64,000 nucleotides of DNA from positions 1 to 64,000 of the IMG/VR virus record IMGVR_UViG_3300018080_008436, one strand, 5' to 3'. The notes beneath the pieces were generated by a model that was not told where the DNA came from, searched no databases, and was given only the letters and a program-made list of their open reading frames with translations. The position numbers and the translations under genes are program-made. Shown here piece by piece: positions 12,740-23,896 of the stretch. Each line of letters starts with the position of its first letter. Position 1 is the stretch's first letter.

Positions 12740-13009
12740 TTATTCCTCCATCATGCTGTCATGGCATCCATCGCAAAGCCATTCATTAGGATCATACTTG
12801 TTTGGACGACCTTCGTTTTCCTCAAAGGTTTCTCCACAGTCTTCGCAGATCATCTTGCCGATCTTATCCCGTTTACCGTTCCGCATGTCTTTAACCATGT
12901 TCGCCAGACCTGCGTAGGTCTTCATGCCTCTAGACGTTCGTACTTTCCCATCCACCATTGGCAGGTCCAGGGTATGAACTAACAACTTGCCATATTCTTC
13001 GTCAGTCAT
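12740..13009 (-). CDS. Zn-finger hypothetical protein
   Basis: CEDC...CDGC. Confidence 0.65.
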   Translation of the reverse strand: MTDEEYGKLLVHTLDLPMVDGKVRTSRGMKTYAGLANMVKDMRNGKRDKIGKMICEDCGETFEENEGRPNKYDPNEWLCDGCHDSMMEE

Positions 13010-13208
13010 TTTCAACGACCTCCAACCCATGCTTTCCCCGACAGGTGGAACAGACGGGGGCTTTCTTGTTTGTGTCAATCTGAACCATGTTCTTCTTGAC
13101 TTTGCGCGACTGGATATGATTGGCGCAAATGAAGCAGTTGCAGTTTTCGTTCTTGACTGCATGAACGTGGGCCTGGATGCGCTTTCTACGATGTCGTGAC
13201 ATTGCCAA
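13002..13208 (-). CDS. Zn-finger hypothetical protein
   Basis: CFIC...CSTC; SD. Confidence 0.6.
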   Translation of the reverse strand: MAMSRHRRKRIQAHVHAVKNENCNCFICANHIQSRKVKKNMVQIDTNKKAPVCSTCRGKHGLEVVEND

Positions 13209-13299
13209 TCTCCTTTTTGTCGAAAACGAAGTTTGAAGGCCAAACTTCTTTTTGTTTATATCATCAACATAGCACAGGTTGTGATGATGTCAAGTCGTT

Positions 13300-13662
13300 C
13301 TACAAAATAATTCCTTCTCCTTGACAGTTCTTGCATTTGGGATTGATTGCTCCATCCAGGTTACATTCCTCGCAACCATGAGTATCATGCCAAATATCCT
13401 CTGCATCGTACTCAACCTGGTTTAATGCGTCCCAGAATGCTTTCTCTGGGAAAGGGTAGGTCAAGGTCTGGATCGGGGTTGTTGCGTCTGTACCTTCAAC
13501 GATAGACCCCATCGATACTCCGTCCTCATTGAACTTGATCCATGCTCCGCAGGACGTACTTCTAAAGATGGATTTGCTGACCAGGGCTTCGATGTCTTCT
13601 CCCTTGATTGGACCTCTTCCCCTTACGAGACTGAATACATTGTTCTTGTTTCTGACATTCAT
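13300..13662 (-). CDS. hypothetical protein
   Basis: SD GGGAG; C-terminal CxxC pair. Confidence 0.75.
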   Translation of the reverse strand: MNVRNKNNVFSLVRGRGPIKGEDIEALVSKSIFRSTSCGAWIKFNEDGVSMGSIVEGTDATTPIQTLTYPFPEKAFWDALNQVEYDAEDIWHDTHGCEECNLDGAINPKCKNCQGEGIIL

Positions 13663-13683: not shown

Positions 13684-13831
13684 TGGAGGCCCCTTCAGGA
13701 GTTCAACCTGAATCTTCTCATCTGGATCGCAATGCATGCCCTTTACGACGAGCCATTTGCAACTAACTACTTACCCTGCTGTGTCCAACAACGTAACCGT
13801 CCGAGATGCTTTATCATTAAGCTAAGGGGCT
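13684..13831 (-). ncRNA. tRNA-like RNA with ~70-nt insert in place of anticodon loop
   Basis: Acceptor GCCCCT/AGGGGC, D arm GCTT/AAGC, T arm TCAGG-TTGAACT-CCTGA, 3' CCA; first gene after promoter 13871-13898. Confidence 0.65.
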
Positions 13832-14101
13832 ATCAAATCTCCTGTTTGTTCCTGTTTCAGTTTATAAGTCACAATAGCATCTCTATTGGGGATGTCAAGC
13901 GCATTTAGAAAAAATAAATCCAGCTTGATGAACCTGGCTTCCCTGGGCCTGAACTAGTGTTTCAAAAAGAGTACTCCTGTTTTTATTCAGGAGTACTCTT
14001 TTTAGAAGATGGTCCAGAGGTCCCAGGTCCTGGCTTTCTGGGCACTAAAAAACCCCCCGCCTCGAAAGGCAGGGGGCTTGACTGGGATCTCCTATCGGAG
14101 A

Positions 14102-15025
14102 CTAGTTGGTCTCGGTTTCAGCCTCGACCTGGGTCTGGGGTTCGGGAGTCGCAGGTTCGGTCTCAGGGGCAACAGTCTTGGCGATCTGCGCCTGAGCCTT
14201 GGCCTGAGCCTTGGACTTGGCAGTCTTCTTGGCAGGAGCCTTCTTCTTGGCAGGAGCCTTCTTCTTGGCAGGCGCTTTCTTCTTGGCAGGCGCTTTCTTA
14301 GCCGTTGTCTCGGCCTTGGGCTTCGACTCGGACTTGGACTTGGCTTCCTGCGCCTTCAAGCGTTCCTGGCGCTTCTCTTCGCGTTCCTTGGCCTTCTGAG
14401 CCTTTTCCGCTTCCTTCTTGGCCTTCGCCTCTTCTCGCGCTTTCTTGCGCTCGGCAACGCCCTTCTGGCGTTCGGCTTCTGCCTCGGCGCGTTCCTTCTT
14501 CTTGGCTTCGCGTTCCTCGGCGCGTTTCTGCTTGTCGGCTTCAGCCTTCGCCTTGGCCTCTTCCTTGGCTTTCGCCTCCTGGGCCTTCTTGGCTTCCATC
14601 TTCTTGATCTGGGCAGGCGTTTTGCCGATATGGTCGCGATTCAGCTTGGGCAACGGTTCCTTGCGGAAGCGCAGGCGATAATGCTGTTCCTCCTTGACCT
14701 TTTCGCCATCGGCGTTCTTGACCATTTTGCGAGTACAACGTTCCATGTAGTACAGATGACCCTTTGCGGAGTAGTTACCCCGATTGGTCTCGGTCGGCCC
14801 CATGAGAACGTTGACGGTTGCCAGAGTCGCTTTGTCCTCGGTCCCCTCCTTGATGACATCCGCTTTGAAGGTCATGTTCTTACGAGCGAAGTCGATGACC
14901 TGTTGCTTGGTAAAGCGTTTGGCATTGGAGTTGTACCCGAAGGTCTCCATGATATGGGCCATGATCAGGTTGTAGTTTGAACCTTGGCGCGGATAGGGAT
15001 TCTGGATTTTCTGGAACTTGGGCAT
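14102..15025 (-). CDS. protein with histone H1-like Lys/Ala-rich C-terminus
   Basis: (K)KKAPA x4, KAEA-rich coil; GC-rich codons; SD AAGGAG. Confidence 0.8.
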   Translation of the reverse strand: MPKFQKIQNPYPRQGSNYNLIMAHIMETFGYNSNAKRFTKQQVIDFARKNMTFKADVIKEGTEDKATLATVNVLMGPTETNRGNYSAKGHLYYMERCTRKMVKNADGEKVKEEQHYRLRFRKEPLPKLNRDHIGKTPAQIKKMEAKKAQEAKAKEEAKAKAEADKQKRAEEREAKKKERAEAEAERQKGVAERKKAREEAKAKKEAEKAQKAKEREEKRQERLKAQEAKSKSESKPKAETTAKKAPAKKKAPAKKKAPAKKKAPAKKTAKSKAQAKAQAQIAKTVAPETEPATPEPQTQVEAETETN

Positions 15026-23699: not shown

Positions 23700-23896
23700 T
23701 GGCAGGCTGGGTTGGATTCGAACCAACGTCCCTTCGTATACTACTCTCCGCTTTCCTGTCTAGCCTCAACAGTACATATCACTTTGAGTGACTCCAGATG
23801 TTTCATTTGACTTTTGGAACTAACCGCGTATCAGTTCCTACTAACAGACTACTTTATCCTTCTGTCTAACGATGCTCTCCTATGAGCTACCAGCCC
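23700..23896 (-). ncRNA. tRNA-like RNA with ~120-nt structured insert in place of anticodon loop
   Basis: GGGCTGG/CCAGCCT acceptor, GCTC/GAGC D arm, GTTGG-TTCGAAT-CCAAC T arm, GCCA end. Confidence 0.75.

What the first reader, a model, noticed from the sequence alone, without database searches (positions are those of the whole stretch)
13684..13831. tRNA scaffold 1: anticodon loop replaced by ~70 nt
Seen: acceptor, D and T arms plus CCA, and an anticodon stem TCTCG/TGAGA enclosing a long insert; T loop (TTGAACT) and D loop are non-canonical. It is the first unit after a strong promoter. The insert holds CAA-ATG..TGA (MARRKGHALRSR) ending at the 3' stem. It is too short for a group I intron and I see no splice product giving a normal anticodon loop. 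Inference: a tRNA-mimic ncRNA (nuclease decoy or tmRNA-like hybrid) or a pseudo-tRNA.
Basis: partly seen in the sequence, partly recalled or inferred. Interest (0 to 1): 0.7.

Follow-up and report, generated by a model that had tools for sequence, protein, structure and literature searches.

The report
Interrupted tRNA-like gene in a megaphage
Just behind an early promoter, a giant phage carries a gene with a complete tRNA body whose anticodon loop is split open by 74 extra bases; it is real and tRNA-derived, but sequence alone cannot say whether the extra piece is removed, carried as cargo, or marks a decaying tRNA copy.

Summary
On the minus strand, 13831→13684 folds as a full cloverleaf. 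It has a 6-bp acceptor stem plus an A1·C72 mismatch, U8A9, a 4-bp D arm, a 5-bp anticodon stem, a 4-nt variable loop, a 5-bp T arm, discriminator U and an encoded CCA. 81 nt lie between the anticodon-stem strands. A strict scan finds this shape only at 20 true tRNAs and here. It found none in 40 simulated genomes.

The host is a megaphage of at least 476 kb with about 60 tRNAs, a tmRNA, RtcB and at least 9 other interrupted tRNA genes. This element is the odd one out. It has G56 and A19 where all 59 phage tRNAs have C56 and 58 of 59 have GG. Its insert matches nothing. Rfam's tRNA model does not score it.

No relatives, RNA data or insert-free variants exist, so conservation, expression and splicing are untested.

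Best reading (0.38): an interrupted tRNA-Trp-like paralogue, released by tRNA processing as a ~148-nt non-decoding tRNA-like RNA. Rivals are a decaying relic (0.30), a spliced tRNA-Trp (0.15) and a cis-acting leader (0.07). tmRNA-like is rejected.

The parts
13871..13898 (-). Sigma-70-type promoter TTGACA-16-TATTGT with an extended -10 TG. The predicted transcription start is near 13864.
   Evidence: 10 of 12 matches. It is one of 20 such promoters in the first 32 kb of the window.
13832..13864 (-). Inferred 5' leader of about 32 nt. Its GGAG can pair with CUCC over the discriminator and CCA. Position -1 is U.
   Evidence: Fold and sequence. The transcription start is inferred, not mapped.
13684..13831 (-). 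Whole tRNA-like unit, 148 nt, from A1 to the encoded CCA.
13825..13831 (-). Acceptor stem 5' strand, AGCCCCT. A1 is mismatched with C72.
   Evidence: Sequence and fold.
13808..13822 (-). D arm, GCTT-AATGATA-AAGC. It has A19 in place of G19.
   Evidence: The same D arm occurs in real tRNAs of other phages.
13802..13806 (-). Anticodon stem 5' strand, TCTCG.
13728..13801 (-). 74-nt insert. It holds hairpin 1 (13795-13770, loop GACA) and hairpin 2 (13763-13726, GTTGCAA..TTGCGAT). The last two bases of hairpin 2 are the first two of the heptamer.
   Evidence: Fold (insert z = -2.2). No similarity to other inserts or to the rest of the genome.
13721..13727 (-). Heptamer ATCCAGA. It would be the anticodon loop (U33, CCA, G37, A38) if the 74 nt were removed.
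13718..13756 (-). Mini-ORF ATG..TGA (MARRKGHALRSR). It has no Shine-Dalgarno sequence and lies inside hairpin 2. It is probably not translated.
   Evidence: Sequence. Inference.
13716..13720 (-). Anticodon stem 3' strand, TGAGA.
13695..13711 (-). T arm, TCAGG-TTGAACT-CCTGA. T54, T55, A58 and G53-C61 are kept. Position 56 is G instead of C.
13684..13694 (-). Acceptor 3' strand AGGGGCC, discriminator T, then CCA.
13300..13662 (-). Co-transcribed 120-aa ORF. Its Shine-Dalgarno GGGAG starts 8 nt after the CCA. It has a C-terminal CxxC..CxxCxGxG zinc-ribbon-like motif. Function unknown.
   Evidence: No hit in Pfam, PHROGs or the Atlas.
13960..14008 (.). Upstream boundary of the unit: a repeated bidirectional hairpin (AAAGAGTACTCCTG..CAGGAGTACTCTTT).

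Best explanation
This is an interrupted, partly degenerate paralogue of a phage tRNA gene, most like tRNA-Trp(CCA).

The early sigma-70 promoter at 13898 transcribes it together with the 120-aa ORF. The body keeps every helix of a tRNA, U at -1, an AU-rich trailer and an encoded CCA. I therefore infer that the host's tRNA end-processing enzymes release it as a stable RNA of about 148 nt ending in CCA. Those enzymes would be RNase P at U-1|A1 and RNase E with exonuclease trimming after the CCA. The same cuts would trim the ORF's mRNA to a short leader.

I think the 74-nt insert stays in. The RNA would then be a non-decoding tRNA look-alike: a tRNA body carrying two extra hairpins where the anticodon loop should be. 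The elbow pair G19:C56 and the 1:72 pair are damaged, so ribosomal use is unlikely. A role as a tRNA mimic or carrier early in infection is the most likely function, if there is one. One example would be soaking up a tRNA-binding host factor.

Shown: the tRNA architecture, its non-random nature, the promoter, and the genomic context of many interrupted tRNAs.

Inferred: transcription, processing, retention of the insert, and any function.
For: - The cloverleaf with CCA is not chance.
- All 20 stem pairs outside 1:72 are intact, and U8, A14, A21, T54, T55, A58 and G53-C61 are kept.
- With the insert deleted, ARAGORN calls a tRNA spanning exactly A1 to A76.
- The unit sits directly behind a strong promoter, in a region built of hairpin-promoter-gene cassettes where true tRNAs are also interspersed with small ORFs.
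- The insert is more structured than shuffles (z = -2.2, 2% of shuffles).
- The same genome holds at least 9 other tRNA bodies carrying inserts of 23-126 nt. Six of them pass Rfam's tRNA cut-off despite the insert.
- The genome also has a mini tRNA-like (acceptor, T arm and ACCA) carrying a conserved module that shows compensatory stem changes. So tRNA bodies carrying extra RNA are a theme in this phage.
- The inserts share no common splice motif and sit at different positions. That argues against one splicing system that removes them all.
- Precedent: T4 species 1 RNA (rnaC, 139 nt) is a stable RNA with a tRNA T arm plus long hairpins.
Against: - There is no evidence of expression, because no RNA run holds it.
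- There is no evidence of conservation. Every other copy found is at least 99.7% identical over 6 kb, and the element itself is identical in all of them. The flanking proteins have no useful relatives.
- The element is unique in its genome, so purifying selection cannot be shown.
- Overall fold stability is unremarkable (z = -1.7).
- The damaged elbow could also weaken RNase P recognition.
- If the ancestor already had A19:U56, as in other phage tRNAs with this D arm, the intact stems are compatible with a recent neutral relic.
Confidence: 0.38

Rival explanations
1. It is a decaying relic. A redundant tRNA-Trp-type gene was hit by a 74-nt DNA insertion and is now drifting. It is still transcribed because of where it sits, but the RNA has no function.
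For: - The phage has a canonical tRNA-Trp(CCA) at 303339-303413.
- This copy deviates at positions that are invariant in the phage's own tRNAs: C56 in 59 of 59, GG in 58 of 59, plus the 1:72 mismatch and a purine at 32.
- The insert is unique and resembles nothing.
- Rfam's tRNA model does not score it.
Against: - No stem pair is broken in 20 pairs, and the CCA is intact.
- If the ancestor had G19 and C56, a rough neutral expectation is about 5 broken pairs. That is my own estimate. It is not significant if the ancestor had A19:U56.
- The insert is modestly structured.
- Phage genomes usually lose dead DNA quickly (general knowledge).
Confidence: 0.3
2. It is a pre-tRNA whose 74-nt intervening sequence is cut out between positions 31 and 32 (or 32 and 33) and the halves rejoined, giving a 74-nt tRNA-Trp(CCA). 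Rejoining would use the phage RtcB ligase after cleavage by an unknown endonuclease.
For: - A 74-nt deletion gives a product that ARAGORN calls tRNA-Trp(CCA), with U33.
- A1 is otherwise rare and is shared with the phage's own tRNA-Trp (alignment).
- By inspection, two other interrupted tRNAs (23700-23896 and 78389-78589) also keep an anticodon-loop-like heptamer at the 3' end of the insert.
- The phage encodes RtcB and an Rnl2-family ligase.
- Lak megaphages have tRNAs with unexplained introns (PMC6784885).
Against: - There is no group I signature and the insert is too short for one.
- No tRNA-splicing endonuclease is found, and by inspection there is no bulge-helix-bulge fold at the junctions.
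- The inserts share no motif or position.
- RtcB next to tRNA clusters is common in phages whose tRNAs are uninterrupted, so it points to repair rather than splicing.
- The product would have A32, G37, a broken 19:56 elbow pair, an A1.C72 mismatch and U73. Bacterial TrpRS usually wants G73 (general knowledge).
Confidence: 0.15
3. It is a cis-acting 5' leader. The tRNA-shaped fold stays on the mRNA of the 120-aa ORF and controls its stability or translation.
For: - The element lies between the promoter and the ORF with no terminator. The Shine-Dalgarno sequence starts 8 nt after the CCA.
- This leader is about 200 nt, while neighbouring cassettes have leaders of about 20-60 nt.
- The damaged elbow might reduce RNase P cleavage (inference).
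Against: - The fold does not sequester the Shine-Dalgarno sequence or the start codon.
- No known leader family matches.
- tRNA-mRNA co-transcripts are normally cleaved apart (general knowledge).
- An encoded CCA and a full D arm are not needed for a leader.
Confidence: 0.07
4. It is a tmRNA-like hybrid. It would be charged, enter stalled ribosomes, and have the internal mini-ORF (A)RRKGHALRSR translated as a tag.
For: A tRNA-like body with an internal short reading frame that ends at the 3' stem.
Against: - Pair 3:70 is C-G, not the G.U alanine determinant.
- A full D arm and anticodon stem are present, which tmRNA lacks.
- There are no pseudoknots.
- The tag is basic and lacks a hydrophobic degron end.
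- ARAGORN and Rfam give no tmRNA call.
- The phage has a genuine tmRNA with the tag AKKVIEFPTASAVAA.
Confidence: 0.02

Closest known systems
Interrupted ('enigmatic intron') tRNA genes of Lak megaphages (Devoto et al. 2019, PMC6784885)
   Same: Both are genes in ~0.5-Mb phages with dozens of tRNAs. Both have a tRNA body plus a short insert in the anticodon region that fits no known intron class. In both cases the mechanism is unknown.
   Different: The Lak cases were recognised by tRNAscan as otherwise normal tRNAs. This element fails both tRNA models because of G56, A19 and the 1:72 mismatch. The phage lineage and genetic code also differ: the standard code fits here. No sequence comparison with Lak introns was made.
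The other interrupted tRNA genes of this same phage (for example 23700-23896, 78389-78589, 195772-195897, 198200-198319, 282011-282138, 282509-282626, 315782-315915, 315930-316051)
   Same: A tRNA body, mostly with an encoded CCA, and an insert of 23-126 nt in or next to the anticodon arm.
   Different: They keep canonical T and D loops, and six pass Rfam's cut-off. Five of them carry a shared 30-nt module that this element lacks.
Phage T4 species 1 RNA (rnaC, 139 nt)
   Same: A small phage RNA of similar size with a tRNA-type T arm and terminal stem plus long extra hairpins. It is encoded among tRNAs. That its function is still unknown is from my own knowledge.
   Different: There is no evident sequence similarity by eye, and no formal alignment was made. 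rnaC lacks a D arm and anticodon stem in the predicted fold. It has a canonical TTCGAAT loop and folds far more stably (z = -4.6).
tmRNA
   Same: A tRNA-like acceptor and T domain with a large internal insertion that contains a short reading frame.
   Different: This element lacks G3.U70, has no pseudoknots, has a full D arm and anticodon stem, carries a tag-unlike peptide, and gets no model hit.
Bacterial tRNA genes with group I introns, and archaeal tRNAs with bulge-helix-bulge introns at non-canonical positions
   Same: An insertion in the anticodon arm of a tRNA gene. Archaeal introns can be of this size and can lie outside position 37/38 (general knowledge; PMC4090602 appears but was not read).
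   Different: There is no group I core, no EndA gene, no bulge-helix-bulge fold by inspection, and the gene-expression signals are bacterial.
Engineered 'tRNA scaffold' for expressing recombinant RNA (Ponchon and Dardel 2007; from my own knowledge)
   Same: The design is identical: the anticodon loop is replaced by a cargo RNA, and the tRNA body provides processing and stability.
   Different: That is a laboratory construct. No natural phage counterpart has been established.

Membership tests
Canonical tRNA (Rfam RF00005) | Score at or above the family's gathering threshold (29 bits) | tested here: not met
   No RF00005 hit at this locus at gathering threshold, at E<=10 on 1.2 kb, or at E<=1 genome-wide. 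ARAGORN makes no call, even with -i.
Canonical tRNA (Rfam RF00005) | Four-helix cloverleaf with 7/4/5/5-bp stems, U8, a variable loop and a 3' NCCA | tested here: met
   The acceptor has 6 pairs plus an A1.C72 mismatch.
Canonical tRNA (Rfam RF00005) | Elbow nucleotides G18, G19 and T54-Psi55-C56 | tested here: not met
   The D loop is AATGATA (A19) and the T loop is TTGAACT (G56). All 59 phage tRNAs have C56 and 58 of 59 have GG. Other phages' tRNAs with this D arm have U56.
Canonical tRNA (Rfam RF00005) | Closed 7-nt anticodon loop with U33 | tested here: not met
   81 nt lie between the stem strands. A 7-nt loop arises only after a hypothetical 74-nt deletion.
tmRNA | Detection by ARAGORN or Rfam RF00023, the G3.U70 pair, pseudoknots, and a tag ORF with a hydrophobic end | tested here: not met
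   Pair 3:70 is C-G. The tag would end ..ALRSR.
Group I intron in a tRNA gene | Catalytic core (Rfam RF00028) and a length of roughly 200 nt or more | tested here: not met
   No hit at E<=10. The insert is 74-81 nt.
Archaeal or eukaryal protein-spliced tRNA intron | Bulge-helix-bulge motif at both junctions | tested here: inconclusive
   Checked only by inspection and in the MFE and centroid folds. None was seen. No dedicated search was run.
Archaeal or eukaryal protein-spliced tRNA intron | A splicing endonuclease (PF01974) available | tested here: not met
   no match in the phage, and the control rang in archaea. The host genome is unknown.
Megaphage interrupted tRNA genes (descriptive class, PMC6784885) | A tRNA gene longer than expected because of an insert in the anticodon region that no known intron family explains | tested here: met
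   The class has no mechanistic definition.
Megaphage interrupted tRNA genes (descriptive class, PMC6784885) | The insert is removed from the RNA | not testable with these tools
   No RNA runs hold the sequence.
Y RNA-like (YrlA) tRNA mimics | An Rfam RF02553 match, a Ro-binding stem formed by the 5' and 3' ends, and a Ro/TROVE protein | tested here: not met
   No hit at the locus. No TROVE gene in the phage. Here the ends form an acceptor stem with CCA.
This phage's hairpin-YUNCNGCAA module family | Match to the module profile | tested here: not met
   nhmmer finds 7 copies and none is here. Pairwise z-scores against all other inserts are below 2.

The most novel reading that the evidence does not exclude
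The phage uses a tRNA body as a natural scaffold. Host tRNA-processing enzymes would release and stabilise a 74-nt cargo RNA, or a non-decoding tRNA mimic, very early in infection. It might act as a decoy or sponge for a tRNA-targeting host defence or another tRNA-binding factor. Together with the module-bearing tRNAs and the mini tRNA-like of the same genome, this would be a family of tRNA-scaffolded phage RNAs.
Probability: 0.2. Interest if true: 0.8.

Novelty: new variant of a known kind. Interest (0 to 1): 0.5.

Why it matters
Interrupted tRNA genes in megaphages were reported in 2019 as enigmatic (PMC6784885). To my knowledge they have no mechanism yet.

This genome is a compact test bed. 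It offers at least 10 interrupted tRNA bodies of three kinds, an RtcB ligase, and this one element, which has lost the decoding hallmarks but kept the fold and the CCA.

If the RNA is stable and unspliced, phages would be shown to use tRNA bodies as carriers or mimics. That bears on phage counter-defence against tRNA-cleaving systems and on natural RNA-scaffold design. If it is spliced, it would be a protein- or RNA-dependent tRNA intron of a kind not known in bacteria or their viruses. If it is a relic, it documents how megaphage tRNA sets turn over.

Tried and rejected
1. Comparative analysis was exhausted.
- blastn against 50,697 phage records gave no match.
- The flanking proteins of 120, 294 and 307 aa have only identical copies, plus 38-41% hits on contigs of 1-3 kb that show no synteny.
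- All other contigs carrying the element are at least 99.7% identical over 6 kb, and the element is identical in all of them.
- TerL relatives at 50-76% identity are fragments of 8-94 kb. The five searched hold no tRNAs.
- A pattern for an insert-free version found nothing in the metagenome collection.
- A body 20-mer and an insert 21-mer are absent from 185,579 species genomes.

2. Expression and variants. No RNA run holds the sequence. DNA contigs from the three runs that hold it (of four laid) show no variant or skipping joint in the element.

3. Paralogues. blastn-short, the module HMM and covariance model R1 each find only the element itself.

4. The T-arm 17-mer hits in IMG/VR are chance matches in GC-rich coding DNA. 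ARAGORN -i's 'tRNA-Val intron' calls there are spurious.

5. Alternative genetic code was rejected. Table 11 gives ORF coverage of 65-98%.

6. RtcB adjacency was downgraded as evidence for splicing. RtcB sits beside uninterrupted tRNA clusters in other phages.

7. The insert shows no complementarity to other parts of the phage genome.

8. The idea that hairpin 2 is a solitary CRISPR-like repeat could not be tested. The phage has no matching array and the host is unknown.

9. The function of the 120-aa ORF stayed unknown after Pfam, PHROGs and the Atlas.

10. The 524-kb parent records could not be searched with R1.

Full report
**Setting**

The window is the first 64 kb of a single-contig virus record of 476,248 bp with 39% GC. 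The same phage occurs on contigs of 524 kb in JGI and ENA assemblies. The IMG/VR record is flagged as a provirus, so it is probably a trimmed version of those contigs.

The phage encodes a large terminase, a DnaB-type helicase, a Lon-like protease and a RecB-like exonuclease. It also has about 60 tRNAs and a tmRNA. The standard genetic code fits it.

The first ~31 kb is a distinctive early-type region. It holds about 25 copies of one hairpin and 20 TTGACA-N16-TATnnT promoters, each in front of a small ORF, nearly all on the minus strand.

**The observation**

Read on the minus strand, 13831→13684 has this order:
- A1, then GCCCCT (acceptor 5' strand)
- TA (positions 8 and 9)
- GCTT-AATGATA-AAGC (D arm)
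- A
- TCTCG (anticodon stem 5' strand)
- 81 nt
- TGAGA (anticodon stem 3' strand)
- AGAT (variable loop)
- TCAGG-TTGAACT-CCTGA (T arm)
- AGGGGC, then C72 (acceptor 3' strand)
- T73 (discriminator)
- CCA

The consistent register is six Watson-Crick pairs plus an A1·C72 mismatch. That register places U8A9, the discriminator and the CCA exactly where a tRNA has them.

The MFE and centroid folds recover all four helices.

A strict positional scan required a cloverleaf, a TTxxA T loop and NCCA, and allowed any insert up to 150 nt. It returns 21 places in the genome. Twenty are ARAGORN tRNAs and the other is this element. It returned nothing in 40 simulated genomes. The scaffold is therefore real and tRNA-derived.

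The promoter is confirmed, as is the 12-codon ORF ending in the 3' stem. That ORF has no ribosome-binding site and lies inside a hairpin.

The last seven bases of the 81 are AUCCAGA. Deleting the preceding 74 nt (13801-13728) yields a 74-nt molecule. ARAGORN calls it tRNA-Trp(CCA) spanning exactly A1 to A76. Out of 1,136 single deletions tried, only 27 give any tRNA call, and the 74-nt Trp solution is the clean one. A near-normal splice product therefore exists on paper.

**How it differs from a working tRNA**

Rfam's tRNA model does not score it at all.

All 59 tRNAs of this phage have C56 and 58 of 59 have GG in the D loop. This element has G56 and A19.

The D arm TAGCTTAATGATAAAGC is not itself aberrant. 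It occurs in genuine Gly, His, Thr and CUA-anticodon (amber-suppressor type) tRNAs of other phages. There it goes with T loops of the form TTTGAnT, giving a compensated A19:U56 pair. Here the partner is G, so the elbow pair is broken.

Add the 1:72 mismatch, a purine at 32 and G37. Even a spliced product would then be a poor decoder. It would also be redundant with the canonical tRNA-Trp at 303339-303413.

**Context in the genome**

This phage has an unusual number of interrupted tRNA bodies.

Five of them carry a conserved module of about 30 nt: a 6-bp hairpin followed by YUNCNGCAA. These start at 195772, 198200, 282011, 282509 and 315930. The module also occurs once between tRNAs, and once in a mini tRNA-like made of an 8-bp acceptor, a T arm and ACCA. 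Its hairpin shows compensatory changes at two pairs across the seven copies.

In three of these tRNAs the module sits between position 26 and an intact anticodon arm (GCA, GAG and AUU). In two it lies inside the anticodon loop.

Four more carry unrelated inserts of 42-126 nt. They lie at 23700-23896 (inside this window), 78389-78589, 79219-79380 and 315782-315915.

The present element shares no sequence with any of them and has no paralogue.

The phage encodes RtcB 92 nt downstream of one interrupted tRNA and an Rnl2-family ligase. It has no tRNA-splicing endonuclease and no Ro protein. RtcB next to tRNA clusters is common in phages whose tRNAs are uninterrupted, so it speaks for tRNA repair as much as for splicing.

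**What could not be tested**

- Every other copy found is at least 99.7% identical over 6 kb, and the element itself is identical in all of them.
- Neighbouring proteins have no informative relatives.
- Related terminases sit on short fragments, and the five searched hold no tRNAs.
- No insert-free version exists in the metagenome collection.
- No RNA run holds the locus.
- DNA contigs show no variants in the element.

Conservation, covariation, expression and splicing are therefore all open.

**Mechanism, committed**

I rate as most likely (0.38) that this is an interrupted tRNA-Trp-type paralogue. It would be transcribed early with the 120-aa ORF and released by ordinary tRNA end-processing. 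The supporting features are U at -1, an AU-rich trailer and the encoded CCA. The product would be a ~148-nt tRNA-shaped RNA that keeps its insert and does not decode. Any function would be as a tRNA mimic or as a carrier of the two-hairpin insert.

Arguments for this reading:
- All stems and the CCA are intact.
- It sits in a prime promoter position.
- The insert is modestly structured (z = -2.2).
- The mini tRNA-like that carries the module cannot be 'repaired' by splicing, so it suggests that tRNA bodies serve as carriers in this phage.
- The inserts share no common splice signal.
- T4 species 1 RNA is a precedent.

Rivals:
- A neutral relic (0.30). This cannot be excluded, because the ancestor may already have had A19.
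- Enzymatic splicing to tRNA-Trp (0.15).
- A cis-acting leader (0.07).
- A tmRNA-like hybrid (0.02). It fails every defining test.

**Comparison and novelty**

The closest described things are:
- the 'enigmatic' tRNA introns of Lak megaphages (PMC6784885);
- the other interrupted tRNAs of this genome;
- T4 species 1 RNA.

It is not a member of the tRNA family as Rfam scores it, nor of the tmRNA, group I intron, archaeal bulge-helix-bulge intron or Y-RNA-like families.

I class it as a new variant of a known but unexplained kind. Interest is moderate for the element alone, because nothing shows that it is used. Interest is higher for the genome-wide set of interrupted tRNAs, which makes the question experimentally approachable.

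Noticed in passing
window 23700-23896 (-): A second interrupted tRNA in the window. It has canonical arms (GGTTCGAATCC T arm, GCCA end) and an insert of about 124-126 nt after the 5' strand of the anticodon stem. A heptamer GTAGTAT (anticodon AGU by inspection) sits at the 3' end of the insert. The RF00005 match is only partial (E = 0.86).
   Followed up: partly
genome 195772-195897 (+), 198200-198319 (+), 282011-282138 (-), 282509-282626 (-), 315930-316051 (-), 281854-281885 (-), 239032-239069 (-); loci L007, L008, L009: Seven copies of a ~30-nt module: a 6-bp hairpin GArnyT..ArnyTC followed by nYTnCnGCAA. Stem pairs 3 and 4 show compensatory changes. Five copies lie inside tRNAs, either between position 26 and the anticodon arm or inside the anticodon loop. 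One lies between tRNAs. No Rfam family matches it, and it was not found in other IMG/VR phages by exact pattern.
   Followed up: partly
genome about 238985-239095 (-): A mini tRNA-like with an 8-bp acceptor stem (GGAGAAGA/TCTTCTCC), a GC hairpin in place of the D arm, the conserved module, a 4-bp T arm with a TTCGACT loop, and ACCA. It has no anticodon arm at all.
   Followed up: partly
genome 198412-199680 (+) and 98705-99301 (-); loci L035, L036: An RtcB RNA ligase gene lies 92 nt downstream of an interrupted tRNA. The phage also has an Rnl2-family RNA ligase. No tRNA-splicing endonuclease or Ro/TROVE gene was found.
   Followed up: yes
window 1800-30500, e.g. 13960-14008: About 25 copies of one inverted-repeat hairpin (arms AAAGAGTACTCCTG / CAGGAGTACTCTTT) are confined almost entirely to the first 31 kb. 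Together with 20 TTGACA-N16-TATnnT promoters they form hairpin-promoter-small-ORF cassettes. The repeat breaks Logan contigs.
   Followed up: partly
window 14102-15025 (-): A 307-aa protein directly upstream has a long Lys/Ala/Glu-rich tail that includes four KKKAPA repeats. It is histone H1-like or nucleoid-protein-like low complexity. The repeat length differs between strains (301 versus 307 aa). No Pfam or PHROG hit.
   Followed up: no
genome 409748-409822 (-): A well-scoring tRNA (62 bits) with anticodon CUA, the amber-suppressor type, which ARAGORN labels 'Pyl'. ORF statistics nevertheless fit the standard code. Its role is unexplained.
   Followed up: partly
genome 192972-193352 (-): A phage-encoded tmRNA with the tag AKKVIEFPTASAVAA. 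It lies at the edge of a plus-strand island (193.6-202.3 kb) that holds a tRNA cluster and RtcB.
   Followed up: no
loci L040, L042-L044, L047, L057 and others (IMG/VR phages): Genuine phage tRNAs (Gly, His, Thr, CUA) share the D arm TAGCTTAATGATAAAGC, which lacks G19. They pair it with T loops TTTGAnT, an apparent A19:U56 replacement of the universal G19:C56 elbow pair.
   Followed up: partly
window 12740-13662 (-): The two small ORFs after the element (120 and 167 aa) both end in CxxC..CxxC zinc-ribbon-like motifs. Neither has relatives outside this phage strain.
   Followed up: partly
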